A DNA stretch of 63,701 nucleotides, counting the filler, from Octopus bimaculoides (taxonomy: Eukaryota), in assembly GCF_001194135.2 (NCBI RefSeq). It is 11 parts of 11 records of this genome, joined end to end, with 100 filler letters (N's around TTAATTAATTAA, not from the genome) between each part and the next. Parts side by side here need not be neighbours in the genome. Positions count along the whole stretch, not along the records: positions 42,757 to 56,083 come from NW_026397824.1; 10 more parts are not named here. One strand, 5' to 3'. The stretch's first letter is position 1. Every line of letters starts with the position of its first letter. The notes beneath the pieces are model-generated. The model was not told the DNA's origin. It was given only the letters and a program-made list of their open reading frames with translations, and made no database searches. The position numbers were made by a program, and so were the translations under genes. Positions 10,362 through 56,083 of the stretch are shown piece by piece.

Positions 10362-10400
10362 CGTTACGAAGTTTTAACTTCTTTTACTCCTTCTGAGAAA

Positions 10401-10535
10401 ATGCGTAGCTCAGTGGTTAGACAACCGTGCTCTCGATGATCATAAGGCTGCAGGTTCGATTTCCTGTCTGGGAGACCCATCGTTACCTTGGGTGAAGCAC
10501 TTTACTTCGCATTGCTCCATTTCACTCAGTTCAAA
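10401..10535 (+). mobile_element. SINE family D head, diverged
   Basis: GTAGCTCAGTGGTTAG...GGTTCGATTTCC (A/B box), then GCACTTTACTTCGCATTGCTCCA...CACTCAG shared with 10812-11067. Confidence 0.65.
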
Positions 10536-10811
10536 GATTAGTTCTAGCAGCTATTGCGGGTGGGAAGTGGGTACTTAGCCGGTGACAGGGTTTGGAGTGG
10601 GGACTCAAGCATTCTCTCTCACACTTATACACCATGGACAACAGAATAAACTCCGGTCTAACAATTCCTTAGTCTTGTGACGGTTCTATTTACTCATTTT
10701 AGTTGTTTTTACGTATTCCGATATCTCCATCCCAACACGAATATATAAGAATGTCGTGAATAACTGTGGTCTGTGTTGGTAAATTTTGGGAGTTAGTGAT
10801 TGAGTGGAGAA

Positions 10812-11067
10812 GTAGTTGTTGTTCCTTCCCGAATCATACCAAATCATAAGGGCCGGTCTCTCGGTTTCCATGACGTATATATATTCCCGACCTGGACGGG
10901 ACGCCGGTCCTTCGCAGGATTGCTCATTATTGGCAGCTGAGTGGACTGGAGCAACGTGAAATGAGGTATTTTGCTCAAGAACACAACGTGTTGCCCGGTC
11001 TAAGATTGGAACTGCAATCTTACGATCATAAGTCACACACCCTATCCACTAAGCCACGCGCCTCCAC
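10812..11067 (-). mobile_element. SINE family D copy
   Basis: Minus strand GTGGAGGCGCGTGGCTTAGTGG head, ...CTTGAGCAA...CACGTTGCTCCAGTCCACTCAGCTG..., ends in CAACAAC repeats. Confidence 0.8.
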
Positions 11068-12378: not shown

Positions 12379-12590
12379 GTAGCGAGATGGTAGTATCGTT
12401 ACCGCGCCAGTCAAAATGCTTAGTAGCCTCTCTTCTGACTCTTTACGCTCTGAGTTCAAATGCTCCCGGTTTCGACTTTGCCTTTAATCTTTTCAAGGTC
12501 GATAAAACAAGTATCAGCTCAGCACTGGGGTTGATGTAAACGACTTTACCGTACCCTCAAAATTGCTAGTTTTGTACCAAAATGGGAAAT
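12379..12590 (+). mobile_element. SINE family B, diverged
   Basis: GAGTTCAAAT...CGACTTTGCCTTTAATCTTTTCAAGGTCGATAAAACAAGTA...GCACTGGGGTTGATGTAAACGAC. Confidence 0.8.
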
Positions 12591-12658
12591 AGTTATTTCC
12601 CAAAGGACAGACGGGTAACAGAAACTGGAAAAAAGATTGAATAAAATTATTTAGTACA

Positions 12659-13167
12659 CTTACTCTTTTACTTGTTTCAGTCATTTGACTGCGGCCATGC
12701 TGGAGTACCGCCTTTAGTCGTGAAAATCGACCCCAGGACTTATTCTTTGTAAGCCTAGTACTTATTCTATCGGTCTCTTTTTGTCGAACCGCTAAGTTAC
12801 GGGGACGTAAACACACCAGCATCGGTTGTCAAGCGATGATGGGGGGACAAACACACANNNNNNNNNNNNNNNNNNNNNNNNNNNNNNNNNNNNNNNNNNN
12901 NNNNNNNNNNNNNNNNNNNNNNNNNNNNNNNNNNNNNNNNNNNNNNNNNNNNNNNNNNNNNNNNNNNNNNNNNNNNNNNNNNNNNNNNNNNNNNNNNTAT
13001 ACGACGGGCTTCTTTCAGTTTCCGTCAACCAAATCCACTCACAAGGCTTTGGTCGGCCCGAGGCTATAGTAGAAAACACTTACCCAAGGTGCCACGCAGT
13101 GGGCCTGAACCCGGAACTATGTAGCTGGTAAGCAAGCTACTTACCACACAGCCACTCCTACGCCTAT
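12659..13167 (-). mobile_element. SINE family A, full length (gap in internal microsatellite)
   Basis: Head, core and tail present; 13-bp tandem duplication ACTCCTACGCCTA at the 5' end. Confidence 0.9.
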
Positions 13168-13969
13168 ACTCCTACGCCTACACTTCTTTACTTTCGGAAT
13201 TCAAGTCCCACTGATTTTGACTTTAATTTTTTATCTTTCCGGCAGTCGATTAAATAAGTATTGGGAAGACGGGAATGTAATCGATTTATTCATCCATTCA
13301 AAATTTGTAATATTGTAGCTGTTTTTAAAACCCATAATTGCGCTACCAACGCAATAGAAAAGCCGTGATTTGGTGGTTTCAATTCTCGGTTGAAATCATT
13401 CTACATCATTTACAATGCCTATAATTTGACAAACAGCTTAGGCTTCCTAAACTCCCATTTTTCCTATGATCGAATGATATATAAATTTAAGTCTGTATTA
13501 GAAAAAAAAAGAAGAAAAAGAAATGAGAATAATCACACACACACACACACACAAAGTAAGGTCCTGTGATTGACGTACAGTGCAAGAGCGCACTTTTGAT
13601 ACATGTCTGACGAAGCACCACTCTAATGTTTGAACCCGCAAATATTACGTAACTTTTCACACGGAATTTTTGCGTGAATTGGCCTTATAAACAGATTTGA
13701 TACAGAAATAATTGTATCTGTGATAAACTCTGTTTTTGTTTTTGTCGTGAACTCGCCTTGAGAAACATTAGTCAACAAACATCATCTCCTAATCTTAAGA
13801 TAGCAAGACACTTCCAAAATATCACGTAAGTGGTGGATCTAGTTTCTTTCAAAAGCATCACAGTATGGTCGCCAAGTAACTTAGAGTTACTATAAACGTC
13901 AAACTATATTCCATTTACTTCGGAAAAATGCAGAGATTAGAATTTTACGTTGTATATTTACTAAACCCA

Positions 13970-14172
13970 AGGTGGCGAACTGGCAGAATCGTTCGCACGC
14001 TTAGCGTCATTTCGTCCGTCTTTACGTTCTGGGTTCAAATTCCACCGGAATTGATTTTTGCCTTTCATCCTTTCGAGGTCGATAAAATAAGTATCAGCTG
14101 AGCACTGGGATCAATTTAATCGACTTAGCTCCTCCCCTGAAGTTGCTGGCTCTGTGCCAAAATTTGAATCCT
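13970..14172 (+). mobile_element. SINE family B
   Basis: GGTGGCGAACTGGCAGAATCG head, GGTTCAAATTCC B box, GCCTTTCATCCTTTCGAGGTCGATAAAATAAGTA body. Confidence 0.9.
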
Positions 14173-14335
14173 ATATTTGCTAGACTGCACGCAATCTCTT
14201 AGAATCTGCTTTATCATCTGTTTGGATTAAGACTCGATGGCAAGATTCACAGCTTGTTAAATAGATTATTTAATGGAATAAAGATAAAATACTACAATAA
14301 ATTAACTGGGATAGCTTTGGCTAGTTGTAGGTATA

Positions 14336-14525
14336 AGGTGTGGAATTAGCAGAACCGTTAATACGTCTAGCATAATGCTTAGCGACGTTTCTTCAAGCTC
14401 TTTACATTCTGAGTTTCAATCCCAGAGGTCAACTTTGCCTTTCTCCATTCGGGATTCGATAAGATAAAGTACCCGTCAAGTACAGAGGTCGATGTAATCG
14501 ACTTGTTCCTTCTCTTCAAAGTTTA
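14336..14525 (+). mobile_element. SINE family B, diverged
   Basis: Same motif order as 13970-14172. Confidence 0.75.
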
Positions 14526-14629
14526 AAGAAATTACAATCTCGGTCATTTATCGATCATGGAAACCGGGTAACCGGTCTTATAAGTCCTGGGGTTGACCAA
14601 AAATTAAAAACAAAATGTTGTAGACATCT

Positions 14630-14791
14630 ACAGGCGCAGCAGTGGCTATATGGTAAGAGGCTTGCTTCCCAACCACGTGGTTCTGGGTTCAGCCTCACTA
14701 CCTGGCAGCTTTGGCAAGTGTCTTCTACTATAACCTCGCGCCAACTAAAGCCTTGTGAGTGGATTTGGTAGACGGAAACTGATAGAAGCCC
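14630..14791 (+). mobile_element. SINE family A head and core
   Basis: CAGGCGCAGCAGTGGCTATATGGTAAG...GGTTCAGCC...AAAGCCTTGTGAGTGGATTTGGTAGACGGAAACTGA. Confidence 0.85.
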
Positions 14792-14819
14792 AGGACCACT
14801 GAACTCAACTCGTCTTTTT

Positions 14820-14999
14820 TTTTTCATTTTCTCTCTCTATTTTTTCTCTATTTATCTTTCATTCTTTTCTGTCGAAGAGCGTAGGCTTGAAATGTAAAAG
14901 ACTTTTCCATTTTTCCCCAGCGTCAAACTAATACACTTGCTTGTTGTTCCAACACTTATCTTCGTCTTTGTTTTCCTATAAACTTGAACTTTGTGTGTG
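14820..14999 (+). mobile_element. Penelope-like terminal fragment with hammerhead-like motif (14863-14902)
   Basis: TTTT-CTGTCGA-A-GAGC-GTAG-GCTT-GAAA-TGTA-AAAG: stem I, variant core, stem II, GAAA, GUA. Confidence 0.6.
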
Positions 15000-15910
15000 N
15001 NNNNNNNNNNNNNNNNNNNNNNNNNNNNNNNNNNNNNNNNNNNNNNNNNNNNNNNNNNNNNNNNNNNNNNNNNNNNNNNNNNNNNNNNNNNNNNNNNNNN
15101 NNNNNNNNNNNNNNNNNNNNNNNNNNNNNNNNNNNNNNNNNNNNNNNNNNNNNNNNNNNNNNNNNNNNNNNNNNNNNNNNNNNNNNNNNNNNNNNNNNNN
15201 NNNNNNNNNNNNNNNNNNNNNNNNNNNNNNNNNNNNNNNNNNNNNNNNNNNNNNNNNNNNNNNNNNNNNNNNNNNNNNNNNNNNNNNNNNNNNNNNNNNN
15301 NNNNNNNNNNNNNNNNNNNNNNNNNNNNNNNNNNNNNNNNNNNNNNNNNNNNNNNNNNNNNNNNNNNNNNNNNNNNNNNNNNNNNNNNNNNNNNNNNNNN
15401 NNNNNNNNNNNNNNNNNNNNNNNNNNNNNNNNNNNNNNNNNNNNNNNNNNNNNNNNNNNNNNNNNNNNNNNNNNNNNNNNNNNNNNNNNNNNNNNNNNNN
15501 NNNNNNNNNNNNNNNNNNNNNNNTATATATATATATATATATATATATATCTACGCATGTCTGTGTGTGTGAGTGTGCTATGTATGTATGTATGTATGTA
15601 TGTATCCGTACACAGATGTTTGTGCGTATAGACTGGTACGTATGGTAGACCTAAAATGCGTGCTCGATTAGTATATATATTTTTAATCCTGTTTGTTACA
15701 TAAAACACTCGTGCGTACATGTGAATGTGTGTGTGTGTATGTATGTGTAAGCTTGTGTTTGTGTGTGTGTATGTGTAAGCTTGTGTGTGTGCTTGTGTAA
15801 GTTTGTGTATGTGTGCATTTGTTTGTATGTGTGTGTGTGTTTGTGTATGTTTGTGTATGTGTGCATGTGTGTGTAGGTGCTTGCGTGTGTGTGCGTGTAC
15901 GCGCGCGCAT

Positions 15911-17330
15911 GTTTTATGTTTTACTTGTTTCAGTCCGTAAGCGGTGGTCATGCTGGGGTACCACAGCATTGGTGTTCCTTTCCTACACTTCTTGTGATCT
16001 TCCGCCTTTAGTTAGATCTTCGTAAATGAAGGAGTTCTAAGTTGCTGCCTTCGGTTGTGTTTCTTGTTGCTAAGTAGACTTATTTGGAATTCTAGCCAAC
16101 AGAAGGCTCAACTACATTTTAGAGATATCTACATCTGCACCATCCTTGTGTCTTAAGGATATTGAAAATTTTCGGGCCTTTGAACCTTAAGCTATTACAG
16201 TATCTGATCCAAAATCTAGATGACAAAGGTGAGATCTTTGACACTACGCAGTGGCTACCTGTTCGGAGATAAGTATAGCTTTCTATGCCAAAGTTTGATG
16301 CAAATCCTTCCAGGTTTTTCGGAGATATTACTGCATATTTTTCCTGTCTTCGGTCTAAGGAGTAGAATCTTAATTTTTTTAGCCTTTCCGAATAGTCGAA
16401 ACCTTGCAACGAGGCAATCTTCTTCGTGTAGCAGCGTTGGAGTTCTTCAAGTTTCGCTGTTAGTTTTATACTATGTGATGATCATAATTTGGAGTAATAA
16501 TCTAGACGGCCGAGGAAAATTGTCCTTCAGAAGACCACCGTGGTTTCCTACCCTCTTGTTCTGAAAGTTCTTAGAATCCATCCGGTCAACTGACTAATTT
16601 CAATACAATCTTAGTAATGAGCACATGAAAAGAATCATCATTACTCATGTCAGTGCCTAGGTCACACACAGATTGAGTCTCTGGTAGTACTGCAACTCTT
16701 CCGAGTCCAGTGTTTTTCGTCTGCATTTCCTTTAACTTTGTGCAGTTTATATTTAGCATTTAAATCATATTGCAGTGCGTATCATCTCTAGGATTCTTGT
16801 GGGACTCCACTCTCCATATACTAATATTGTTCCCTGGGAGACAGTTCCATTGGGTTCTACTGCTTGACTTCAGTCTTTTAAAACAACATGCAGCCATTCC
16901 ATCAGTTTTCAGACTATGCCGAGATCATGCAATTTGCGACATTTCATTTCATGATCGGTTTTTATGAAAGACTTTCGCAAAGTCGTGATTGATCACATCC
17001 ATATTTGAGTAACTGAGCACCTGTTTAACACCCAGTCGTAGTGTTGTAGGAGCTGTGTGTCAGGCAACTTCTTTCCGATCGAAAACTACGTTGGGTATCA
17101 GTTAGGAAGTAATTATCTTCAAAGAACGTGACTAGATACCTTCTGATAATTCATTCCATGACTTTTCTAATAGGTGAGGTCAGAGAGATAGGCCCATAAT
17201 TTTTAGCATCTGCTCTACTTTTGCCTCTAAAAATGGAGCATATTACGTCTTCCTTTAACTTGTCCGAAGGTTTGTCACTTGCAATGACGTTCTGGAAAAA
17301 AAACACTGCTGTGGTTTTGCTTGGGTTTGT
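15911..17330 (-). mobile_element. 5'-truncated, decayed CR1/L2-group LINE (RT domain, C-terminus and 3'UTR)
   Basis: Minus-strand fragments NYGPISLTS..KVME, QRSFRSERSCLT, MDVINHDFAKVF, DLGTDMS, QLTGWILRTFRTR, LEELQRCYTKKI..YSERLKKLRFYSLDRRQEKY..GPKIFN, all typical of CR1-type ORF2; many stops and frameshifts. Confidence 0.9.
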
Positions 17331-42756: not shown

Positions 42757-42844
42757 CATGCTAAATAGGGCAGTTAAAGACCAAACCACGATAAAAAATC
42801 CTTAAGGCACGCTGTTAATGACATCATTGTAAGAACAAATCACA

Positions 42845-43055
42845 CCTAGGAATTATCCTTTGTAAGCCTGTACTTGCTCTATCTTGTGCGGAACTACTAA
42901 GTTTCCGTCTCGAAATCGTTTCACAAGGCTTTGGTCGGCCCGAGGATGTCGTAGAAGACACTTCCCCAAAATGCCACGCATTGACACTGAACCCCTAACC
43001 ATTTGGTTGGGAAGCCAGCTTCTTACCACACAGACACTTCTGCGCCTATGTGCAG
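42845..43055 (-). mobile_element. SINE family A, degraded
   Basis: TTTGTAAGCCTGTACTT..., CACAAGGCTTTGGTCGGCCCGAGG, CTTCTTACCACACAG. Confidence 0.8.
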
Positions 43056-43422
43056 CCCCATTTATTTATACCAACATAAATTTTAATTTCAAATAACTTC
43101 ATATGAATATTTCATCAAACTCTATCTCCTGTTACTTCGGAATAGCTTAAATAAGAATAATGACAACTTTTTTTTATCCTTTATTAAACATAGTTCAAAA
43201 TACACCGTTAGACTTTTACAAAATTCGCTTGAAACGCTATTTCGTTTGAAACTTATTCATATTTTCATTAACCAATCAAATTTTACAGATCTTATGCGAT
43301 CTATGTCATATTTTATTTGGGACGATGAATCGATTGATAATGTAGACATGTTTTTGTATGTGTATGTACGTATAAGTGAATATATATATATGTGTGTGTA
43401 TATGTGTATATGGGTGTATGTG

Positions 43423-43454
<32 letters not shown>

Positions 43455-44150
43455 TATATATGTGTGCGTGTTCTTATGTGCATTTTCTGTTTTCTTATAT
43501 ATATGGATTTGCATGTACATAAGCGTACTTACATGTATGTGAGTGTGTGTATATATTTGTGCATGATAAGTATATATCTAAGTGAAAACTAATCAAAGCT
43601 TTTATGTATATGTATGTATGTGTGTTTCCGTATATATATATATATCTGTATGTGTATCAGTGTATATTTCTACTTATCCTGAATTAGTAAAAAAAAAATA
43701 TATGATCGTGTGATAGTAACTGGGAATATATTCTTATATATACATAAGTTCTTTTTTTATATATAGAAATTACATATGTAATTTAATTTATCACCTCATT
43801 CATATTGCACATTATTAATATTATAATTTAATCTTCAATCTCTATTTATCTACCCTTCCTTGACCTAATTATATTTGTATAACATATCTTACCCATTACA
43901 AAATTGTTACCCCCACCGCCTAGACATATATCAATACTAATCATAAACAGTGTTCTTCAGTCTGCCGTGATGGCTCAAACAACTAACACACAATATTTCT
44001 AAGGGTATAATCTCTCTGAAGAGATTAAGCTCAGAAATATGATTTCTTAATTTCACTGGGCCTAATTGAAACAGCTGTAAGAGATAATGATCGATTTTTT
44101 ATGCTTTGATAAACTCTCATGAACTTCAATATCTCCATTTACTAATTCTT

Positions 44151-44185
<35 letters not shown>

Positions 44186-44255
44186 GTTGTACTTGGTGAT
44201 GGTCATATTGCCAGTTTAGCCAATAAAACCACACGCACTTATATATATATATATA

Positions 44256-44286
<31 letters not shown>

Positions 44287-45514
44287 GTAGCAAACCATAG
44301 AGGCAAATCTTTTTTACTAACTTATTTAGAAAATATGAAAGCCGACCTAAGCCGGGAGATGCAACGAGTAATCAGCAACCACTTATGCAAAACATAAGCA
44401 CACACACTCATCACCAACTCATCACCAAATCACACACACAAGGCTCCATACAAAAAGCTACCCTCACTGCTACCTCTGAACAACATAACAAGACGCTGAG
44501 CTCTGAGACCAATACAAGTATCAAGCTATTCTTGCCTCTACATGCAGATACGTAATGTAAGGCTGAACACAGTATGGCCCTATGTGAAGTGGTTCTCTGG
44601 GCAGAAACGATGAGGAACTGGAGCTCCTTACCGGCAATGGTTGTCCTGTAAGGAGACCCTGTCAGCTAGACGGCAGTTCGGTCGAGCCGATGAGTAAAGA
44701 CACACAAACATTGCATTTTATGTAATAGAGGAGGTTTTCATAGGTGCAAGAAAAACAGTTACGGATGTATTCAGTGTGATGGCTAGGCCTTGCAAGGACG
44801 GTAGTATTAATAATGAATGGACTGAGGGAAGTGAAGGAGCCAGGATTCTCTAGAATGGGATTTTGGAAGGGAACTACGGACCTGTAAGTCGTGTAGTTTT
44901 CCAGATCACTTGAAGGAGGAGAGAGGTCGGCTAATGAAAAGTGTGTGAGTGAAAGCCGGAATGAACTCGAGAAGTGTGAAAGCCTTTCCGGCGAAGAGTT
45001 TCGTTAGCAGGGTGGAAAAGGATGAGAAAAGAAATGTGTTTGGAAAGGTTGAGGAGAGAGAGTGGAGCACATATCACGCTGACAAGTACGTGGTAGAGCA
45101 ACTGGGACTAAGGTGGTGAGACTTCCCTGGTGTGTGAAAAGAGGGTCCAAATATCAAAACTGAAGGTCTTGGCCAGAGATACACAGACGTCAGAGACGGA
45201 TGAATTGAGAATGTATGTGTATGTGTGCATGTGAGTGTGTATGTGTATATACGTGTCTATGTGTACGTATGTGTATATATGTGCATATACGTGTGCATGA
45301 GTATCATCGGAGTACAGACCGAAACTTCGAAGTCACTGTCGAAATCGTCTTATTCAAGAATTAGAAATTTGTACTTTACGAAAGTACAGAGTAACACACA
45401 TCAGAATAAACTAAAATTGTTCTTATTACAAGTGAACATAAAAACAAGCATTATATTTATATATATATCTACGTGTGTTATTGTGTGTGCGTGTGTTTGT
45501 ATAATATATATACA

Positions 45515-45550
<36 letters not shown>

Positions 45551-46269
45551 GCGCATATTTACGAATTACCATAAAAACCTTCATCAGACATTTCAAACCA
45601 AGATGATGTTCACTAATTTATTGAACCCATATTTAATGACCTATATAATTTACATTTGTACTGAGTACCTCTCTACTCATCAGCCGCATAGTTATTCATA
45701 TTACTAATCTATCTCATTCTGGACTTTAAATAAATTGATCAATACCGTTTTTGTAGAATAAATGCGGAAGAATATTATCTATTCATGATAAATACATGCT
45801 GCATTATTGCAGTTAGTTCGCTATAATAGCAGAAATAAAAAGCAACCCCACAGATAACTCTTAATGACAACTACATAAACAAAGCAACTACATACACACA
45901 CACATACATACATACATACATACGTACATATCTATATCTCTCTTTCTCACTCTATATATATATATATATATATGTTTGAGTGTGTGTGTGTGTGTGTGTG
46001 TGTGTGTACATATATAGATAGATATACGGACAGACAGACAGACAGGTAGATAAATAGTCAGACAGACAAGGTAGATAGATAGATAGATAGACAGACAGAG
46101 AGACAGACAAGCAGATAAATAGACAGACAGGCAGAACATAGAGAGAGAGATTGATAGACAGAGAGACAGACAGACATAAAGAGAGATATAGATTGATAGA
46201 CAGACAGACAGATGGATACATACGTACGTAGAAATACAGGCACTCGCGCGTATATCTTTAACATTTTTA

Positions 46270-46430
46270 ACAAAATTACTATTGACGGTGACTCAAAAGC
46301 TTCGGCTTGTTAAGCCATTATCGGAGTGCTTATCTGGTACTTATTTATCGACTCGAACGGAAGAAAAGCGGAATTTGAACTCAGAACGTGAGGAGGTACG
46401 AAATGCCGCTAAGATTGTCCAGCGTGATGG
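46270..46430 (-). mobile_element. SINE family B fragment
   Basis: Minus strand CTTAGCGGCATTTCGT...ACGTTCTGAGTTCAAATTCCGC...GTCGATAAATAAGTACC. Confidence 0.75.
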
Positions 46431-46477
46431 TTCTTAATTTATTCTTTCAATATTACAAGCAGAATTTATATTACAAA

Positions 46478-46685
46478 CAGAATCCCTAATACACCGGGCG
46501 AAATGCCTAGCGACATTTCGTCTCTCTTTACTTTTTGAGATTAAATCCTGCCGAAGTTGACTTTGCCTTTCATCCTTTCTTCAGGGTCGAGAAAATAAGC
46601 ACCAACTGAACACTGGTGTCGATGTAAGAGACTTACTCTTCTCCCCGAAATTGCTAGCCTTGTGCCAAAATTGGAAACCAATATT
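46478..46685 (+). mobile_element. SINE family B
   Basis: Body GTTGACTTTGCCTTTCATCC...; flanked by repeated ATATTACAAACAGAAT (46468-46483, 46681-46696). Confidence 0.85.
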
Positions 46686-48609
46686 ACAAACAGAATTTAG
46701 TGCACAATGCGATGAGTTAAATCTTGCAGTAATTTTGGATAGCGATGTCATTCATCCGTTCAGTTGAAATGTACGACATGCCAAAGATTTTATGGAGTTT
46801 CTTAAAACTCAGAGCATGAATATTGTAATGTTCTTACTCGTTCCAACCTTTACTGTACACACACTTTTTGCATCATAATAGACTCTGGAGTAGCACAATC
46901 AAAGAAAAGACTTTTGTTCAATAATATTATTTTCAAGGTGGCGAGTGACAGTTGACTTGGAGTTGTTGAGATTTACTTGCAGTTTCTGCGATCTGACTTG
47001 ACAACATGCGTGAATTAATTTTGCATTTCATCAATTCCGCATTTCATCAATTCTGCATTTCATCAACATTTCTCCATAACGTTCTGCAATCTGAGTTGAT
47101 ATCTCGTGTAAATTAACTATCTGTTTCCTCAAATTTGCGTTTCATCAACAAACTCCCAGCCTGTGACAATATTGGCACAAATGTAAGAGCGTGTAATGAG
47201 GTACCATGCATATCTGTTCCGGTTCCTTCCAATTGGAACTCAATTCCACGCTTTTATATTGGCCTTGTCATTATGAACCGCTGCCTCTGAATCTCTATTG
47301 ATCTCTGAAAACTTACTATTCCGTGAAATTACAATTGCCTTATGGAAGCAGAAGTTGAGAGTGGATTTTCATTTCATTGCCTTAGATACAAAGATATCCT
47401 ACAAAGTACCTTGAAGGTGAACTATCATTTATTTCCACGTTAACAATATTGAGTCCAATTCTGATAATTTACATTATAACCACTACCATACCATGTTATA
47501 TTACTGAACATGGCTATTGTGAAGATGCGTGCGCACGATTTGTGTGTTGTGTTACTACATCTGTTATACGGAGAAACTGTGTATAGCTATATTTGTTAGA
47601 AACGACTAAAAATTTTCTTTGTGAATCTTTTAATTATATATTCATCTATTTTTTTATCTTCCCATATTGACACCATCCGTAATTTTGAGACGATTTCGAG
47701 GTTATATTAATCAGTATTTCCTCAAAAATATTTACAGTAATAGCGAACACACTATAAAGTTAGAAGCCGCAGAGAAGATGGAAAGTATTCTTGGAATAGA
47801 GTGTGCTCACAGAATTGAAGATTTCATGCAATTATTTTAGTTACCGTTCTCCGGGCTAGATAATTATACTAGTCTTAAATGAAGGATTTTATATGAATTT
47901 TAGACCTATATTAATCAATGTTTTTTAAAAACCAATGGTTCGTAACAATAATATTTAGTAGAAAATATATAAAATTCGGTTAAATCCATTTATATTTCTC
48001 ATCAATCACCCCTCACATATGTATAAATCAAAAAACGAGACATTTTGAAATCAGTTAAATTACTATCTGTAGGCATGCTCATGTCAAAGACCTGTTCATA
48101 TATGAACACATGCATGTGTATACCTGTATATGTTTGTGAAACTAAATCCATCCATCCATCTGGCTACCTAGCTAGCTAGCGAATTATCTCATAAACAATG
48201 AATATATTCGGGCATACACAAACATTAGTATATGCGACATTGTACCTTGTGATCTGATGTGTATTTTGGAATTGTATGCTCCTGAATATATATTGTTGTG
48301 AAAAATAATCCAGCTTCCATGAAATAACCTTGCTATTTGTATATACTAATGGACTTTATTTAACAGTTTCTGCTAATAATATTTTCTGTTATTGTGACGT
48401 CAGAGCTTTGTGTGTCCTCCGGCACATACAATAGAGATTATACTTAATAACAATACAGACTGTTTACTTCTAAGGTTTGCCGTGAAAACAATCTTCTACA
48501 TTTACACATATACAGTGATTTGCGCAAATACTCGAACATTCAGACACCCACACACAGATATATATATATATACATGTATTTAATTATACACACACACACA
48601 CACACACAC

Positions 48610-48657
<48 letters not shown>

Positions 48658-49809
48658 TCCATATATACATATGCTGCCATATGTGTCAAAATCTGATATA
48701 AATGTTGCTGCCACGTTCCACAGACGTTTTGATTCCCTGGGATTTCGCTATTCAGTTCTTAATATATTTTTATTTAGTTTCAGCTTTGTCACTATATAGC
48801 TATGCAAAATGAATAACATCACACACTTTTGTCTTTCCTCTATTATGATTACATCCTGTTTGTCTTCATGTGTTGTATTATCAATTTATACAGAAAAAAT
48901 CCCACAGGATCATATAATAGCAATTTTCAATAAAAGCTTCTAGCTAGAATTGGTAATACCAGTTTGTCTGCTGTGTGTCCAAGTTTTCAACTAGCTTCAT
49001 CCAGTCTTCTTTTCTATATCCTATTTTATATTCTTTCTATATTCTCCTTGAATCATCTACATATATTCACGTATTATAATGGATAAAAGTCTCATCTATT
49101 TCCCAACACCTCTGACATTTGATATCTTTCTGCATTTTCGCCACCTTTTGTTTTATAAACAAACAAAAAGAAAAAAAACGTAATCGCTTGTTTCTGAGTA
49201 TTTATGATAATGGCATGTTGCTTTCTTTCTTCAAAATTTCCTTCCTTCGAACTATCCGCGTTGCTTTTCTCCTGATACATATTCTGTATGCTTGATAAAT
49301 TTTACGTTCTACACTGTTCCTGCCAATACTGCTACGTATTGTTTCTTTTATTTGTAACGAAATATCATTTACATACATTCCTCCATCCATCCATCCATTC
49401 AGACATACATAAAAAAAAACTACATATATACACTGACACACATATGTATGTATCACCATTGATATCCATGGCTGCACATTAAATATGCGTTTCACATTGT
49501 CGAAAATAGCTATTTTCTACACCTATAATTGCTAAGTGTACTGTGTACGGTTTTTGTTATATTGAGTATTCTTTCGTGGTATATTTTCTTTTAAATATAT
49601 TCTCCAATCCATTGATTCTCCCTTTTCACGGTTTGTAAGTTCAACTTCACTTTTCATATTAGTGCCCTTGTTTTGTTTATGTTCTTACTTATTCGATTTA
49701 GGTTGGAAGCCCAAATGTTATGTCTGCAATATCTCATTTAACTGAGGCTCCTTTCGAAAAATAATAAAATTCTATTATCATTCTCACCATCATCATCATT
49801 GTTGTTTCC

Positions 49810-49990
49810 AGGCGGCAAATGGCAGAATCGTAAGCGGCATTTCGACCGTTCTTAGGTTCTGAGTTCAAATTCCGCCGACTTTGCCTGTCATCCATTCTGG
49901 GCCGATAAATTAAGTATCAGTCAAGTACTAGGGTCGACGTAATCCACTATCCCCTTCCTCCAAATTACATGTCTTGTTCCTATAGTAGAA
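49810..49990 (+). mobile_element. SINE family B (internal deletions)
   Basis: TGGCAGAATCG, GAGTTCAAATTCCGCCGACTTTGCC. Confidence 0.8.
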
Positions 49991-50018
49991 AGGATTATCA
50001 TCGTTGTTGCTGTTATCA

Positions 50019-50230
50019 GACGGCGAGCTGGCAGAATCGTTAGTACACCGGGGAAACTGCTTTGCGGTATTTCGTCCGTTTTTACGTTCTGACTTCAAAT
50101 TATTCCATGATCAATTCGCCATCCATCATTTCGCTGTTTATAACATAAGTACCAATTTAGCACTGGGGTCAGTGTAATCGACAGCTCTCCTTACGCAAAA
50201 TTGCTGGACTTGTCCCAAAATTTAAAAATA
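50019..50230 (+). mobile_element. SINE family B, uninterrupted (empty-site reference)
   Basis: GGCGAGCTGGCAGAATCGTTAG...GCGGTATTTCGTCCG...TTCAAAT; target motif present once at 50066-50077. Confidence 0.85.
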
Positions 50231-51165
50231 TCATTAGAAAGCAATTAAAACTCATTGTCCAAAAGTAGCTAGCTGAGTCTTTATATGTTATGTACGAAAT
50301 GATAACTATTAGTTATCTGTCGAACAGTATTATAAAAGCAGAGAAAAGAAAGCTGCACGCAACTACATTCACTATTGGTGCCAGAATTTTGTTTTCTCTG
50401 TTTCACAAGTAACACTTTATGGAAAGATGAGAACATCGCCTAACGCCTGCTGTCAAGACATGACGGCCGGAAAACGAAGGAGACATTGCCAGTAGTAATA
50501 TTTTTCGAGATATGACGATGGTTAGAAAATGGATGAAAGTCAAGGGCAGAAAGAGGTCGAAGTAGTTAGCGAATAGAAATAGGAGAATTAAAAGCGAGCC
50601 AAGGCTGAACACAACAAACGCACAAGAATATAATTAATACAGTTTAACAAAATGCTGGAATCTGAAACAGGTGCATACATATCTAAGAGCACTTAAACGG
50701 TAATTAGCCAGGAAGTACAAAGATAAGAAACGTGTAATTCTTGAAGAAGAACATGTAAGAATGCAACATGTTGAATCCAACACCAAGAATGCTTACGGGC
50801 ACTTTCAGGACACACAATTCCCAACACAATCAACCGAAGTGTCATATATGTATTGTAATAGTCACACCAAGTTCCTATGTTCTCGATATGGATGTGAGCT
50901 GTCTTGACTTTTGTTTATTTCATTGTATATCCATCTCTGTCCATTTTTGTAATACATATATATATATGTATCTGCGTATGTATGCGCACATCTCACTTTC
51001 TCTCCATATATATGTGTGTGTGTGTACTCTTATTCAAAATGATGTGCTTAACTATTGTGTTCCTCTGACATTTTATTTACAAATATCAGACTTCATGCAT
51101 TATTCCGTACTGATCTATATTATTTATGTGTGATGTTTTATTTATTAATTATTAACACTATTAGA

Positions 51166-51270
51166 AAGGTGGCGATCTCGCAGCACGTCTCGCACAATGC
51201 TTAGCAGTGCTTCGTTCGTCTTTACGTTCCGAGTTCGAGTAACGCCTAATTTGACTTTGCCTTTTAGCAA
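51166..51270 (+). mobile_element. SINE family B fragment, diverged
   Basis: ATGCTTAGCAG...GTCTTTACGTTCCGAGTTCGAG...GACTTTGCCTTT. Confidence 0.65.
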
Positions 51271-51534
51271 AGCTAGAGATTCTCAAATAATTTTCAGTTC
51301 ATTATAAATGCTCTTACAACCATTGGTTTTCAAACTGTCATGAGATGCTACATAATTTTCAGTTTCAGTGAGTAGATATTCATATTTTCAGAGCTTGTCA
51401 AATTCCTCAACCCGATTATATAACAAGGGATACTAACATAGATTATTAAACAGACTTTACGATTTAGGTTTTTAAGGCCGGGAGCTGGCAGAATCGTTAG
51501 CACGCCGGACGAAATACTTAGCGGTATTTCGTCT

Positions 51535-53465
51535 CCGTGAGATTTCTGGTCGGACGTGTTATTACTCGCTGCGGTTTATTCTAGTATAACGCCACTATTG
51601 TTTGGTGGGCGTTGCTGAGATGGAGAAAATGAAGACGTATGCAGCAGCGACGGGGAGTCGAGCTTCCGTCGTCCCAGGCCTGTTGAAGCAATATGAAATA
51701 CATTGGAATGAAGACATGGCTAAGAAGGTTGGAAAATATAAAGAAATGATAAAGAAGGAGGGGCCAAACGTAAAGTTGACCCCATCAGAGGAGGAAAAGA
51801 GGAAAATGGAAATTGGAGTCGTGGAATATAAATCCTTTTCAAAGAAAAATAAAAGAATAGAGAGTGCAACGAAGGAGGAGGTGGAGGAGTGTTTGAAGGA
51901 ATTGCAAGAAGATGTGTCGTTTTTTACAAGAGGCAAGACATACGCGTCTGTAGAAATAACATTTGTATCGGAGGAGGCAGCAAAAAAATACGCCAATAAA
52001 ACACTAGCCAAGGGAAACTGGATGCTCTTTCCCAATAAGTTGGGTAGACGTCCAACGTGGGTTAGAGTGGGTAGGATCCCACCGAAAATAGAGTTGGAAT
52101 GGGTAATGGCAACAGTTTTTCCTGAAAGAGGAGAAGATGTAAGGATAATTATGATAAGCAGAACCCAACAAATAAATTGCTGGGGATATGGATTGGCAGT
52201 GCTTTTTATGGCAAGTCAGAGAGTTTACAGTGACATACCGGAGACACTGGAACTGCCTAACGAGGACAAACTGGACATAATGTTGGAGGGGAGACCTCCA
52301 AAGTGCTACGAATGTGGCAAAAGAGGTCACATTAGAAGAAGGTGCCCAGAAATAATGGAAAACAAAGAAATGGAAACGCAAGAAGGCGTGATAGAGGAGA
52401 GGAAACAGTCACAAGAAGAAGAACAGAGAGCTGATTTTGAGGAAGCTAAATCAAGGAAGAGAGAAAGGAGGGGCTCATCGCCGAAAGTCGAAAAAGGGAA
52501 AAAATGCAAATCACAGGATCAAGTGGGATTACTGAGGAAAGAAGATAATAGCGGCAGAACATTACCACAGAACCATACAGTCTCACAATAGCACTGACAG
52601 ACAGATACACAGATGCATAAACACACAGACATACATACACTCGGAAGCGAAGAAGATAACGCAGAGTTGCAGAAACCTAAAAGCACGGAACCTGAAAACA
52701 CAGACACAGAGACAGACTTACAGTCACATAAACATGCAGAACCACAGATAGATAAACACACAGATATACAGTCACAAAGAAATATAGAAGAACAGACGCA
52801 TGGTAGTACAGAATCATAAAAACAAAAAAATAACAGACATACAGACGCAGGAGGTACATAGGAACGGCATATATTCGATGCCATATCGATACACACAAAA
52901 AATAGAGAAGAAGATATCCAAAATAAAAGACATTGTCAAAGTGGACCTCTCGGACCGTTGCGATAAGGAGGCGAGATGGATTTTAATAGCAAAAGAAAAG
53001 GATAACAAATTGAAAGAGGCTTTCCCGACAGATATAAACCCACTGGGGCCCGAGGGGTATTTCGAACCCAGCGCTCCAGTGGTGAACTACGAGGAAATAA
53101 AAGATTATATAAAATGGTGAGTAGTTTTATCTTGGATAAATTAATTGAGATAATTTTGAAAAGAATTATCGAAGACTGTGAAAGGAACTATTGAGAACTG
53201 TTNNNNNNNNNNTATATAAAATGGTGAGTAGTTTTATCTTGGATAAATTAATTGAGATAATTTTGAAAAGAATTATCGAAGACTGTGAAAGGAACTATTG
53301 AGAACTGTTGAAATAATTGAAATAACGCGGCCGCCCCGGGGTGGGGCTGGGGTGGCGGTCCCATCATTGTTTAATTTCATTGTTCCATTCTATCATGTGT
53401 TAATTGACCCCGCATGTGTGTATTGTCCCATCTGTGTTTAGCCCCTTGTGGGTAATACAGAAATT
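51535..53465 (+). mobile_element. ORF1-only Tx1/L1-like non-LTR retroelement with 12-bp TSD
   Basis: Flanked by GGTATTTCGTCT at 51523-51534 and 53466-53477; short 5'UTR, gag-like ORF with CCHC knuckle, 3'UTR with G-rich block and AATACA; no endonuclease/RT; ~1824 bp after removing the 97-bp assembly overlap and the 10-N gap. Confidence 0.8.
51620..52591 (+). CDS. LINE ORF1-like nucleic-acid-binding protein with CCHC zinc knuckle
   Basis: First ATG 51620; CYECGKRGHIRRRC (CX2CX4HX4C) preceded by ...PETLELPNEDKLDIMLEGRPPK, typical of L1/Tx1 ORF1; same frame resumes after TAG/TGA to 52819, then a shifted frame runs to 53120. Confidence 0.8.
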   Translation: MEKMKTYAAATGSRASVVPGLLKQYEIHWNEDMAKKVGKYKEMIKKEGPNVKLTPSEEEKRKMEIGVVEYKSFSKKNKRIESATKEEVEECLKELQEDVSFFTRGKTYASVEITFVSEEAAKKYANKTLAKGNWMLFPNKLGRRPTWVRVGRIPPKIELEWVMATVFPERGEDVRIIMISRTQQINCWGYGLAVLFMASQRVYSDIPETLELPNEDKLDIMLEGRPPKCYECGKRGHIRRRCPEIMENKEMETQEGVIEERKQSQEEEQRADFEEAKSRKRERRGSSPKVEKGKKCKSQDQVGLLRKEDNSGRTLPQNHTVSQ

Positions 53466-54615
53466 GGTATTTCGTCTGCGGCCACGTTGTGTGTTCAAAT
53501 TCCGCAGAGGTTGACCTGGCCTTCCATCCTTACGGGGTCGATAAAACAAATACTATACAAATGGTGCTATTCTATCGATAATGTCCATTGAATGTTAACA
53601 AAGTGACTAATCATATTAAAAAAACTTCCCCTGTCTCCCTGCAAGTTTCCAGACTAAAATATTTCACAGGCATGAAATTTCGAGTTGCGACAAGTTAATC
53701 AGAGGGAATATGTCTGTGCATTGTTGTGAGAGTGTGTTTGACACTATACCTGTGTATTTTATACATAATTATGCTTCGAACGGTACAGCTCGAAGTCAAT
53801 AAAACTATTAAAGATATGTGTAACTATGGGACCACAAAACGTTCGCTTAAATGAAAGTCCAAGGCTGAGTTATCCTTTCGAAGATTATAAATTCTGAAGG
53901 CGGCAACAATATCTATCTGTTGTGTGTGTATATACATACACACATACATACATACACATATACACATACACCTACCAAACACGTGCGCGCACACACATAT
54001 ATTCATGCAGACAAAGTGAAAAACACGTGTCTTGGGATCACTACGAACGTCACTCATTTCGGTAATGAAAAAACGTAATTTTTTTTTTGTTATTCAAACA
54101 TATTCTCGTTTTGTTTACGTTGAAAGTAAAATTTCCTTCCAGCTATAAATGACAACACCTAGCGTAAATGCAGAAAACAATAATAGAAATGAGAATGAAA
54201 TACGCAGCAGGACCTAAGAATTTATGACATAAAGAAATAAAACCTTTTTAAAATACAGCGATAATACACCTCGATCACTTTAAGTGATACACTAAAAAAA
54301 ACCCAGCTAAATGTACATTTTTCACAAACGTTGACGCTGCTTGACAAATTATTGATAAAGATAATTCCGATTTGCTGTGACGCCAGTTGAAAGTACAAGT
54401 AAATCGTAAAATGCACTACATTATGGAAAATAAATAATTAAAAAAACTTGGTAGAATTTTATTGACAAGTATGTGTCACCCAGCGCTCTTCACCCGAATG
54501 GGCAAGTAAATATAACTCGCGTGCCATTTCATAGCCAGCAGGTAAAACAGGTTTCTTTATAAATCTGTCCAATATATGCGGCGATATTTCCTTAACAAAG
54601 GATATATGAAACAGT

Positions 54616-54989
54616 GGCACTCCGTCGCTTACAACGACGAGTGTTCCAGTTGATCCCATCAACGGAACAGCCTGCTCGTGAAATTAACGTGCAAGTGGTT
54701 GAGCACCCCACAGACACGTGTATCCTTAACGTAGTTCCCAAGGAGATTCAGCGTGAGTGTGACAACGCTGGCCCTTCGAAATACAGGTACAACAGAAACA
54801 GGAAGAAAGAGTGAGAGAAAGTTGTAGTGAAAGAGTACAGTATGGTTCACCATCATCCCCTGCCGGAGCCTTGTGGAGCTTTAGGTGTTTTCGCTCAACG
54901 AACACTCACAACGCCCGGTCTCGGAATCGAAACCGCGATCCTACGACCATGAGTCCGCTGCCCTAATCAATGTGCCATTGCGCCTCCAC
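54616..54989 (-). mobile_element. SINE family C with TSD
   Basis: Near-identical to 18579-18954; 13-bp TSD TATATGAAACAGT at 54603-54615 and 54990-55002. Confidence 0.92.
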
Positions 54990-56083
54990 TATATGAAACA
55001 GTAGACACTATCAAAATAAGACCGGAATGAAGATGCCTGTGGTTAATGTCGTGAAAAATGTCCTATACACAAATACATCGGAATGATAGTCTTGGATGTA
55101 TGTAACATGACTGAAACTTGTCCCGTGATTACGTGGGACAGAAAAAATTGTAAGTGAACAACGGGATAAATAAATGCAACATTATAATAGTAGGAGTTTC
55201 AATTTAGATACAAGACCTTGTAACGATCACACACCACATAGCTATTCTTTATCTGTGACATCAAACGTATGCATAAAACAAAAGAATGAAATTAAACAAA
55301 ACATGTAGACTGGAGGTTTAACGTGTGCACATGCGTGAGGTTAAAGAAATTCGATGATACCCTCCCTGGAAGAAATTAAGAAGTGAAGATCGAAGAAAGA
55401 GAGAGAGAGAGAGCTTTAAAAGCAGCACTTTCTATTACCCACTATTTCCAGAGCGTAACTTTCCCAAGATCCGAGGATGTCCCACCATTCTATTTGCTAT
55501 TCCTTGTCTAAAAATACCATGATCATCCTCCTTTTTATTAACTACCTATATATGATGGCCTCATATATAAATATCTCAAAATATAAATAATAATAATTAA
55601 GGATTCCCTTATTGTAGTAAAGGATTTTTTTTATTGTTGTAAATATTATAGGTTCGATACTTATTGATTTACTCAGTCGGTTCATTGATCGGTTGAAAAA
55701 AACAGAATGACCTAAAAAATTAATGCTACTCTCATCAGAGTCATTATGTGTGTATATATTTATATATAACAACCATGTATGTATATATAAAAAAGAACTA
55801 CATTTGCTTTTAGAAACCTCGAATGGGTATCGTAAGATACAGACAAGAAAGGGATATTTCGAAAGTAGCATCGCCCCTAAAACAGCAAAAATGTTAGGTA
55901 TTATTACCGTTACAGAGCAGGGAAAATTGCAGCCAACAGCCATGGGAATCGAGACCACATTCTCCAAGATACCGGCTGAGTGCTTTAACCATTAACAACA
56001 AACAGCGCCGATTTTCAACGCGAAATAGATAGCTTTTAGAAATATAACCCGTGTTACGTGAGCCATCATATATATAAATATAT

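What the first reader, a model, noticed from the sequence alone, without database searches (positions are those of the whole stretch)
51476..53555. ORF1-only Tx1/L1-like retroelement inserted between the A and B boxes of a tRNA-derived SINE
Seen: a SINE-B copy is cut after GGTATTTCGTCT (51523-51534) and resumes with the same 12-mer (53466-53477). Removing 51535-53465 plus one TSD restores a normal SINE-B; the uninterrupted copy at 50019-50230 carries the motif once. The insert encodes one gag-like ORF with a CCHC knuckle and no endonuclease or RT. The only gap (10 N) is flanked by a 97-bp overlap, so ORF2 is unlikely to be hidden there. Known: Tx1-clade LINEs are often target-specific (U2 snRNA, 5S rDNA, tRNA-gene spacers, other transposons), and ORF1-only non-autonomous L1 derivatives (HAL1) exist. 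Inference: a compact non-autonomous element mobilised in trans by a site-specific Tx1 LINE, using an abundant SINE as a safe landing pad (a parasite of a parasite).
Basis: partly seen in the sequence, partly recalled or inferred. Interest (0 to 1): 0.88.

Follow-up and report, generated by a model that had tools for sequence, protein, structure and literature searches.

The report
ORF1-only Tx1-like retroelement inside an octopus SINE
A 1.8-kb decayed mobile element in an octopus genome keeps the RNA-binding gene and the 3' end of a Tx1-like LINE but lacks the copying enzyme; it sits inside a common SINE repeat, and nothing yet shows it aims at that SINE.

Summary
GGTATTTCGTCT flanks 51535-53465 and occurs nowhere else in the window. 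Removing the insert restores a SINE that aligns without a break to intact copies. The 10-N gap lies between two identical 97-bp ends, so this is an unmerged overlap and leaves no room for ORF2.

The insert (about 1,824 bp once collapsed) is an ORF1-only relative of octopod Tx1-like LINEs:
- Its ORF1 has two RRM-like domains, a CCHC knuckle and a conserved C-terminal block at 52800-53120.
- This ORF1 is homologous to ORF1 of full-length LINEs in O. vulgaris, O. sinensis and Argonauta, where an APE+RT+zf-RVT ORF2 follows.
- That ORF2 scores higher against Xenopus Tx1 than against human L1.
- The last ~70 nt are 81% identical to the 3' end of an intact O. vulgaris LINE.
- This copy is dead: two stop codons and one frameshift.

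Three gap-free O. vulgaris relatives are also ORF1-only (about 1.7 kb).

The "SINE as landing pad" idea is untested. It rests on one copy, SINEs make up about 12% of octopus genomes, and no relative sits in this SINE. The closest known analogue is HAL1. Interest is moderate.

The parts
51476..51534 (+). 5' part of the interrupted SINE copy; A-box-like TGGCAGAATCG at 51486-51496
   Evidence: Aligns to the heads of uninterrupted SINE copies in the window, L005 and L006.
51508..51533 (+). Perfect ~11-bp hairpin within the SINE (GACGAAATACT / tagc / GGTATTTCGTC); its 3' arm is the duplicated target
   Evidence: DNA fold of the restored SINE; sequence read.
51523..51534 (+). Left copy of the 12-bp target-site duplication GGTATTTCGTCT
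   Evidence: Exact 12-mer; only two occurrences in the window.
51535..53465 (+). Inserted ORF1-only element: 1,931 bp as assembled, about 1,824 bp once the 97-bp overlap and gap are collapsed
   Evidence: Bounded by the TSD; length computed.
51535..51619 (+). 5' UTR (85 nt), beginning CCGTGAGATTTCTGG
   Evidence: Read. Similarity to the 5' ends of full-length relatives is not above chance.
51620..52591 (+). Main open part of ORF1 (323 aa from the ATG): two RRM-like domains, a CCHC knuckle (52301-52351) and a long helix; ends at TAG 52589-52591
   Evidence: Pfam zf-CCHC. 461 homologues at E <= 0.001. AlphaFold2 model with alignment, pLDDT 82.4. Best Foldseek hits are tandem-RRM proteins.
52577..52791 (+). 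Low-complexity CA/GA-rich linker with an internal ~135-nt duplication; carries in-frame stops TAG 52589 and TGA 52595
   Evidence: Repeat family D10; comparison with O. bimaculoides P0009.
52800..53120 (+). Conserved C-terminal block of ORF1 (...LKEAFPTDINPLG...KDYIKW*), now in another frame after a frameshift in the A-run near 52826
   Evidence: Colinear with the C-termini of P0001 and P0009. The motif LKxxFPxDVG is present in uninterrupted ORF1s of full-length LINEs P0007, P0020, P0090 and P0100.
53121..53465 (+). 3' UTR (238 nt after collapse); no ORF2 and no poly(A)
   Evidence: tblastn with ORF2 of L003 and of Xenopus Tx1: best E = 0.31.
53106..53309 (.). Assembly artefact: exact 97-bp overlap (53106-53202 = 53213-53309) on either side of the 10-N gap 53203-53212
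53393..53465 (+). Conserved 3' tail ...GACCCCGCATGTGTGTATTGTCCCATCTGTGTTTAGCCCCTTGTGGGTAATACAGAAATT, shared with full-length LINEs
   Evidence: 81% over 68 nt to the O. vulgaris L007 LINE 3' end. Local score 63 against shuffles 13.6 +/- 2.2, z = 22. Alignment A4. A terminal stem-loop is predicted with marginal support, z = -1.8.
53466..53477 (+). Right copy of the 12-bp target-site duplication
53478..53600 (+). 3' part of the interrupted SINE; B-box-like GTTCAAATTCC at 53493-53503
   Evidence: Alignment to intact copies.

Best explanation
The insert is a decayed copy of a short (about 1.8 kb) non-autonomous retroelement derived from an octopod Tx1-like LINE of the L1 superclade. It keeps a 5' UTR, the whole ORF1 (two RRM-like domains, a CCHC knuckle, a linker and a conserved C-terminal block) and the ~70-nt 3' tail of the LINE. 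It lacks ORF2, the endonuclease and reverse transcriptase gene.

Inferred mechanism:
1. Its RNA is bound by ORF1p, either its own or the LINE's.
2. ORF2p supplied in trans by a full-length relative recognises the shared 3' tail.
3. ORF2p nicks the target and copies the RNA by target-primed reverse transcription, which produced the 12-bp duplication.

Shown here: the anatomy, the homology, the absence of ORF2, the shared tail and the TSD. Inferred: trans-mobilisation and recognition of the tail.

This copy landed in a SINE. Nothing here shows that the SINE was the intended target. The copy can no longer make full-length ORF1p.
For: Insertion:
- TSD and restoration of the SINE.
- The gap is an unmerged 97-bp overlap.

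ORF1 homology:
- The ORF1 family has 461 hits, including proteins from O. bimaculoides, O. vulgaris, O. sinensis and Argonauta.
- Homologous ORF1s are followed by an APE+RT ORF2: within 5-11 nt in L001 and L003 and about 200 nt downstream in L006; the two ORFs overlap in L007 and L008.
- O. vulgaris L007 has an intact ORF1 (516 aa) and ORF2 (1,132 aa; APE+RT+zf-RVT).

Clade:
- Xenopus Tx1 was the only hit of L003 ORF2 named after a known retrotransposon: 323 bits, 30% identity.
- Human L1 ORF2p scores 253 bits and R2 scores 86 bits.
- L007 ORF2 against Tx1 gives 322 bits.

Fold: tandem RRMs plus a CCHC knuckle, which is type I ORF1p as described for Tx1-like elements (PMC5203782).

3' tail: shared with full-length LINEs L007 (z = 22), L008 (z = 6.7) and L006 (z = 4.2), and with ORF1-only L004 (z = 8.7).

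No ORF2 remnant in the insert.

Architecture elsewhere:
- ORF1-only elements of 1,733 and 1,724 bp lie in gap-free O. vulgaris sequence, and a third ORF1-only copy (L002) has lost its 3' tail.
- In a neighbour-joining tree the ORF1-only elements group together, bootstrap 68%.
- At least three further close copies exist as O. bimaculoides gene models, 89-95% identical in protein.
Against: - Only one copy of this family could be read as DNA. Whether its close relatives (P0001, P0006, P0009) also lack ORF2 is unknown.
- Clade assignment rests on pairwise scores, not on an RT phylogeny with reference elements.
- The 5' UTR shows no significant similarity to the 5' ends of full-length relatives. 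An intact 5' end is therefore assumed, not shown.
- Trans-mobilisation is inferred. No partner LINE from the same genome was seen.
- The ORF1-only clade has only moderate bootstrap support (68%) and thin sampling.
Confidence: 0.8

Rival explanations
1. The element belongs to a family that specifically targets this position of the SINE, with the hairpin or GGTATTTCGTCT as a safe landing pad.
For: - The Tx1 clade is known for target preference, including insertion into other transposons (PMC4494074).
- Three O. vulgaris ORF1-only relatives share homologous upstream flanks, and two of them share homologous downstream flanks, within one palindromic repeat.
- The O. sinensis full-length relative lies between (ATT)n tracts.
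- O. vulgaris L007 forms head-to-tail arrays.
- The TSD is exactly the 3' arm of a perfect hairpin.
Against: - Only one copy was examined.
- SINEs are about 11.6% of the genome (PMC13282606) and about 10% of this piece.
- None of the seven related elements with readable flanks is in this SINE.
- The Argonauta relative has an ordinary 16-bp TSD in sequence that does not look repetitive.
- Sequences at the inferred nick sites of four elements share no clear motif. I compared these by eye only.
Confidence: 0.22
2. This is a one-off, internally deleted copy of a full-length LINE, with ORF2 lost during or after insertion. It is not a member of a propagating ORF1-only family.
For: No second DNA copy of this family with the same architecture could be retrieved.
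Against: - ORF2 is missing cleanly: the complete ORF1 and 238 nt of 3' UTR, including the conserved tail, remain.
- Three O. vulgaris relatives have the same ORF1-only architecture, two at about 1.7 kb.
- Its ORF1 groups with those ORF1-only elements, not with ORF1s of full-length LINEs.
Confidence: 0.1
3. It is a full-length LINE whose ORF2 was lost from the assembly at the 10-N gap.
For: The gap lies 83 nt after the ORF1 stop, which is where ORF2 starts in full-length relatives.
Against: - The two contig ends overlap exactly by 97 bp.
- The right-hand contig itself reads ORF1 end, then 3' UTR, then TSD, then SINE, without interruption.
- A hidden ORF2 would need to be flanked by 97-bp direct repeats, which no full-length relative shows.
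- The collapsed 3' UTR (238 nt) is close in length to the 235-nt 3' UTR of the full-length relative L006.
Confidence: 0.04
4. It is a domesticated gag-like host gene or a processed retrogene rather than a transposable element.
For: Octopus annotations list relatives as 'uncharacterized protein' genes.
Against: - The ORF is broken by two stops and a frameshift.
- A TSD is present and the insertion lies inside a SINE.
- The 3' tail is shared with LINEs.
- The family is multicopy and some members are fused to unrelated host domains in gene models, for example WD40 and LDL-receptor.
Confidence: 0.02

Closest known systems
HAL1 (half-L1) of mammals
   Same: A non-autonomous LINE derivative that encodes only ORF1p and depends on ORF2p supplied in trans (PMC5753468, citing Smit 1999 and Bao & Jurka 2010).
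   Different: HAL1 derives from mammalian L1, has a type II (Transposase_22) ORF1p and a poly(A) tail. This element has a type I ORF1p (RRMs plus CCHC), a specific non-poly(A) 3' tail and Tx1-like partners. Its ORF1 profile matches no L1 ORF1p structure by sequence.
Tx1-clade LINEs (Tx1L in Tx1D, Tx1-Mar in Mariner-N4_AMi, Keno, Kibi/Koshi)
   Same: The partner ORF2 is closest to Xenopus Tx1 among named references. It is inserted inside another transposable element, as many Tx1 families are (PMC4494074). L1-Tx1 families are already annotated in octopus genomes (PMC13282606, PMC8967140).
   Different: The element itself has no ORF2. Target specificity is not shown for it. No RT phylogeny was made.
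SINEs that share the 3' tail of a 'stringent-type' LINE
   Same: A ~70-nt 3' tail is shared with full-length LINEs. An Argonauta SINE carries the same tail type. Tail recognition by ORF2p is established for stringent LINEs (PMC4176376).
   Different: This element is 1.8 kb, codes for ORF1p and has no pol III head.

Membership tests
LINE ORF1p, type I (RRM + CCHC) | At least one RRM fold | tested here: met
   AlphaFold2 model built with a 28-sequence alignment, pLDDT 82.4. Best Foldseek PDB hits are tandem-RRM proteins: IMP3 RRM12 at E = 1.6e-4, then NONO/SFPQ and hnRNP A1 UP1.
LINE ORF1p, type I (RRM + CCHC) | CCHC zinc knuckle | tested here: met
   Pfam PF00098, 22.7 bits against a cut-off of 20.8, residues 234-250.
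LINE ORF1p, type I (RRM + CCHC) | Homologues sit directly upstream of an APE+RT ORF2 | tested here: met
   Seen in L001, L003, L006, L007 and L008.
Tx1 clade / L1 superclade (applies to the partner LINEs) | ORF2 with an N-terminal APE endonuclease, an RT and a C-terminal zinc motif | tested here: met
   L007 ORF2 matches PF03372, PF00078 and PF13966. This holds for relatives only; the window element has no ORF2.
Tx1 clade / L1 superclade (applies to the partner LINEs) | RT groups with Tx1 in a phylogeny that includes reference clades | tested here: inconclusive
   Pairwise scores only: Tx1 323 bits, human L1 253 bits, R2 86 bits. No Repbase or Dfam references were available.
Tx1 clade / L1 superclade (applies to the partner LINEs) | Target-specific insertion (typical of the clade, not obligatory) | tested here: inconclusive
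   One copy of this family. Relatives lie at a shared site in a palindromic repeat (L002, L004, L005), between (ATT)n tracts (L006), in a tandem array (L007) or in apparently ordinary sequence (L008).
HAL1-like ORF1-only non-autonomous LINE derivative | ORF1 present and ORF2 absent between the element's ends | tested here: met
HAL1-like ORF1-only non-autonomous LINE derivative | 3' end shared with an autonomous LINE | tested here: met
   81% over 68 nt to the L007 LINE; z = 22.
HAL1-like ORF1-only non-autonomous LINE derivative | Several independent copies with the same architecture | tested here: inconclusive
   Close protein copies exist in O. bimaculoides, but their DNA could not be retrieved. 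More distant O. vulgaris ORF1-only elements do exist.
HAL1 proper (mammalian L1 derivative) | Transposase_22 (type II) ORF1p and a poly(A) tail | tested here: not met
   No Transposase_22 hit in Pfam. The ORF1 profile finds only CCHC knuckles in the PDB. The element ends ...ACAGAAATT with no A-tail.
tRNA-derived SINE (the host repeat) | tRNA-like head with A and B boxes | tested here: inconclusive
   A-box-like TGGCAGAATCG and B-box-like GTTCAAATTCC were read by eye. ARAGORN at 80% threshold calls a tRNA-like fold in the restored copy only. Rfam gives no tRNA match at E <= 1.
tRNA-derived SINE (the host repeat) | Short, multicopy, dispersed | tested here: met
   At least five copies in the 13-kb piece, and further copies in the O. 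vulgaris and O. sinensis loci.
Insertion by target-primed reverse transcription | Target-site duplication flanking a complete 3' end | tested here: met
   12-bp TSD. Relatives have TSDs of 16 bp (L008), about 14-19 bp (L004) and 20 bp (L005).

The most novel reading that the evidence does not exclude
Octopods harbour an old, diversified lineage of ORF1-only Tx1-like elements. Its ORF1s are only 36-41% identical between subfamilies. Each subfamily targets a particular site in another repeat: here, the hairpin arm of a SINE; in O. vulgaris, a palindromic repeat. The lineage tracks active LINEs by acquiring their 3' tails. The same tail type appears on at least one octopod SINE (Argonauta) and possibly on others. 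If so, the LINE, the ORF1-only element and the SINE form a three-level parasitic network.
Probability: 0.2. Interest if true: 0.6.

Novelty: new member of a known kind. Interest (0 to 1): 0.4.

Why it matters
ORF1-only LINE derivatives are documented mainly as HAL1 in mammals. Finding the same strategy in Tx1-like LINEs of cephalopods, with a different type of ORF1p and a specific 3' tail, suggests it is a recurrent route to non-autonomy.

It also gives a natural system for asking whether ORF1p in cis helps an RNA to capture ORF2p in trans.

There is a practical consequence for annotation. Several octopus "uncharacterized protein" gene models are ORF1s of this repeat family, for example A0A0L8HJ83, A0A0L8ID47 and A0A0L8FR31. 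Some are fused to host domains in gene models.

The "parasite of a parasite" targeting idea would be more interesting, but it is not yet supported.

Tried and rejected
- More DNA copies of this family. Exact look-ups of P0001, P0006, P0009 and the window ORF1 found no contigs. A scan of metagenome contigs with the 3'-end pattern found none. A protein-based scan of the same collection found none.
- Single-sequence AlphaFold2 gave an unusable model, pLDDT 39.6. It was replaced by the alignment-based model.
- The first word-indexed protein search found only one homologue. The full HMMER scan was needed.
- Rfam on the piece gave no tRNA or SINE family. All hits were miRNA models landing on microsatellites, which are chance matches.
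- 5' UTR similarity to full-length LINEs is not above shuffles, although a CGTGAG(A)TTTyTG word recurs.
- 3' UTR similarity outside the last ~70 nt is not significant.
- Tails of the window's own SINE copies against the window element's tail are not significant. Against the L004/L005 tails they reach only z = 2-3.6.
- ORF2 remnants in the insert: none.
- The 26-aa ORF that overlaps the ORF1 stop (ATGGTGA, 53114-) has no detectable relation to ORF2.
- dN/dS was not attempted. No DNA exists for close copies, and the distant ones are saturated.
Full report
**Observation.** The piece (42757-56083) has 36% G+C and is rich in microsatellites and in copies of one SINE.
- GGTATTTCGTCT occurs at 51523-51534 and 53466-53477 and nowhere else on either strand of the window.
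- Joining 51470-51534 to 53478-53600 gives a sequence that aligns without a break across the junction. It matches the neighbouring copy at 50019-50230, an O. vulgaris copy (L005 14534-14401, 83.6% over 134 nt) and an O. sinensis copy (L006 21026-20885, 78% over 142 nt).
- The intact neighbour carries GGTATTTCGTCC, so it matches the motif at 11 of 12 positions, not exactly.
- This is a genuine insertion with a 12-bp target-site duplication.

**The gap.** 53106-53202 and 53213-53309 are identical over 97 bp, on either side of the 10 N.
- The right-hand copy starts with the last 15 nt of the reading frame (…DYIKW*). It continues uninterrupted through the 3' UTR into the TSD and the SINE 3' half.
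- The left-hand contig holds the SINE 5' half, the TSD and the ORF.
- Both contigs belong to this locus and overlap, which is the signature of an unmerged overlap.
- A hidden ORF2 would require 97-bp direct repeats on both sides of it. No full-length relative shows such repeats.
- After collapse the insert is 1,824 bp. Its 3' UTR is 238 nt, close to the 235-nt 3' UTR of the full-length relative L006.

**What the insert encodes.** The long ORF (51620-52591, 323 aa from the ATG) has one Pfam hit, a CCHC knuckle.
- An exhaustive HMMER scan found 461 relatives at E <= 0.001.
- Named relatives come from O. bimaculoides (P0001 89%, P0006 95% and P0009 94% identical), O. vulgaris, O. sinensis and Argonauta hians. 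The rest come from unnamed ENA and metagenome contigs.
- With a 28-sequence alignment, AlphaFold2 gave a confident model (pLDDT 82.4). Its best PDB matches are tandem-RRM proteins.
- The protein is therefore two RRM-like domains, a CCHC knuckle and a long helix. This is the type I ORF1p described for Tx1-like and plant L1 elements (PMC5203782).
- By sequence, the family profile finds only CCHC knuckles in the PDB and no mammalian L1 ORF1p.

**The ORF once extended further.**
- P0001 and P0009 run on into the 106-aa ORF at 52800-53120.
- A motif there (LKEAFPTDINPLG) is conserved at the C-termini of uninterrupted ORF1s of full-length LINEs: P0007, P0020, P0090 and P0100.
- In the window copy this block is cut off by TAG 52589 and TGA 52595, which lie in a duplicated CA-rich linker (family D10), and by a frameshift near 52826.
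- P0001 and P0009 are gene models, so their exact joins may be predicted introns. The conclusion rests on the uninterrupted ORF1s.

**It is a LINE ORF1.** An APE+RT ORF2 follows the homologous ORF1 in five loci:

| Locus | Source | What follows ORF1 |
|---|---|---|
| L001 | Marine metagenome | ORF2 starts 11 nt later |
| L003 | ENA contig | 1,158-aa ORF2, 5 nt later, in a tandem array |
| L006 | O. sinensis | ORF2, frameshifted |
| L007 | O. vulgaris | Head-to-tail array; first unit has intact ORF1 (516 aa) and ORF2 (1,132 aa; PF03372, PF00078, PF13966) |
| L008 | Argonauta | 5,438 bp between 16-bp TSDs |

- For L003 ORF2, the only hit named after a known retrotransposon among 118 was Xenopus "Transposon TX1 149 kDa protein": 323 bits, 30% identity over 943 aa.
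- Human L1 ORF2p scores 253 bits and R2 scores 86 bits.
- L007 ORF2 gives 322 bits to Tx1 by BLASTP and 244 bits to human L1 by phmmer. These two scores come from different programs.
- This places the partners in the L1 superclade and nearer to Tx1, but it is not a phylogeny.
- L1-Tx1 families are already annotated in octopus genomes: 13 families and 421 recent insertions in O. vulgaris (PMC13282606; also PMC8967140).

**No ORF2 in the window.** tblastn with ORF2 of L003 and of Tx1 finds nothing in the insert (best E = 0.31) or elsewhere in the piece.

**Shared 3' tail.**
- The last ~70 nt of the insert are 81% identical to the 3' end of the intact O. vulgaris LINE L007. The local score is 63 against shuffles of 13.6 +/- 2.2, z = 22.
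- The tail also resembles the 3' ends of the Argonauta LINE (z = 6.7), the O. sinensis LINE (z = 4.2) and the O. vulgaris ORF1-only element L004 (z = 8.7).
- Upstream 3' UTR and 5' UTR similarities are not above chance.
- A terminal stem-loop centred on GCCCCUUGUGGG is predicted, with marginal support.
- The pattern, in which only the tail is conserved, is what is seen between SINEs and their "stringent" partner LINEs (PMC4176376). I infer that a relative's ORF2p mobilised this element in trans.

**ORF1-only is not unique to this copy.**
- Three O. vulgaris loci from a gap-free chromosome assembly carry ORF1 homologues with no APE or RT within 8 kb.
- L004 and L005 are 1,733 and 1,724 bp between their junctions and end in the same tail type, …GGCCTTGTGCCTATAATAAAGAGAAA.
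- In a neighbour-joining tree of the RRM-CCHC region, the ORF1-only elements (window plus P0001; L002, L004 and L005) group together with 68% bootstrap. ORF1s of full-length LINEs fall outside this group.
- This hints at an old ORF1-only lineage, but the sampling is thin.

**Target choice.**
- I could read only one copy of this family. All attempts to retrieve others failed.
- SINEs are about 11.6% of the O. vulgaris genome (PMC13282606) and about a tenth of this piece. One hit in a SINE is therefore unremarkable.
- None of the related elements lies in this SINE.
- Against that, the group does show target preferences:
  - L002, L004 and L005 share homologous upstream flanks, and L004 and L005 share downstream flanks, within one palindromic repeat.
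  - L006 sits between (ATT)n tracts.
  - L007 and L003 form arrays.
  - Tx1-clade families often target microsatellites, small RNA genes or other transposons (PMC4494074).
- The window TSD is exactly the 3' arm of an 11-bp perfect hairpin in the SINE. I cannot say whether this means anything.
- I put the targeting hypothesis at about 0.2.

**The host repeat.**
- It is multicopy. It has A-box-like and B-box-like words on either side of the insertion point.
- Evidence for tRNA origin is weak here. Rfam gave no tRNA hit at E <= 1. ARAGORN called a tRNA-like fold only at a relaxed threshold, and only in the restored copy.

**Comparison with what is known, and verdict.**
- The closest analogue in function is HAL1, the ORF1-only L1 derivative of mammals (PMC5753468). 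This element is not HAL1: it has a different ORF1p type, no poly(A) and Tx1-like partners.
- Insertion of Tx1-type elements into other transposons has precedents (PMC4494074).
- I file it as a new member of a known kind, a non-autonomous ORF1-only LINE derivative. This copy is a decayed one. The "safe landing pad" reading remains an open and testable hypothesis.

Noticed in passing
L007 (O. vulgaris OX597840.1) 2584-17026: Head-to-tail tandem array of full-length Tx1-like LINEs with a period of about 5.28 kb. The first unit has an intact ORF1 (516 aa) and ORF2 (1,132 aa; APE+RT+zf-RVT), so it may still be active. L003 (unnamed ENA contig) shows a similar array with a period of about 6.56 kb.
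   Followed up: partly
L008 (Argonauta hians) about 6990-7132 and 13160-13244: A SINE that shares the core of the octopus SINE ends in the same 3' tail as the adjacent full-length LINE (…AAGCCCTTGTGGCTAATAGAGAAAT; z = 8.7 against the LINE and z = 12.6 against the window element). The LINE, the ORF1-only elements and at least one SINE subfamily therefore share one tail type. Tails of the octopus SINE copies in the window are only weakly similar.
   Followed up: partly
L005 7443-7462 / 9187-9206; L004 7906- / 9653-; L002 5281-5924: Three O. vulgaris ORF1-only elements sit at the same place in a palindromic, MITE-like repeat. The 5' and 3' 'TSD' copies differ by the same T versus G in both L004 and L005. 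This suggests the 5' copy travels with the element, for example through co-transcription with the target, and is not a fresh duplication. Unexplained.
   Followed up: partly
L006 (O. sinensis CM016872.1) 8724-8778 and 14347-14370: A near-full-length LINE (ORF2 frameshifted) is flanked on both sides by (ATT)n. This may be a microsatellite target or the element's own repeat tail.
   Followed up: no
window 51508-51533: The duplicated 12-mer is exactly the 3' arm of a perfect ~11-bp hairpin in the SINE. Both inferred nicks therefore bracket one hairpin arm.
   Followed up: partly
window 52577-52656 and 52712-52791: An internal ~135-nt duplication in the CA/GA-rich linker of the element carries the two in-frame stop codons. 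The O. bimaculoides model P0009 lacks this 147-nt block.
   Followed up: yes
window 53114-53194: A 26-codon ORF (MVSSFILDKLIEIILKRIIEDCERNY*) starts at an ATG that overlaps the ORF1 stop (ATGGTGA), which is where ORF2 would start in a full-length element. It has no detectable similarity to ORF2.
   Followed up: partly
window 43340-46040, 48596-48677, 53870-54045: All Rfam matches in the piece (mir-297, mir-3149, mir-466, sno_ZL1 and others, all far below gathering scores) fall on TG/TA/CA microsatellites and are chance hits.
   Followed up: yes
window 46325-46680: Two SINE copies in inverted orientation lie next to each other. A short SINE fragment lies at about 51170-51260, just upstream of the interrupted copy.
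   Followed up: no
proteins P0140 and P0105 (O. bimaculoides P0140; source of P0105 not looked up): Gene models fuse this ORF1 to WD40 or LDL-receptor class A domains. These are probably intronic or adjacent TE copies merged into host gene predictions.
   Followed up: no
L002 10930-12697, minus strand: ORFs of 444 and 148 aa; the shorter shows an RT-like YMDD motif. They are not detected with the Tx1-like ORF2 query and probably belong to a LINE of another clade.
   Followed up: no
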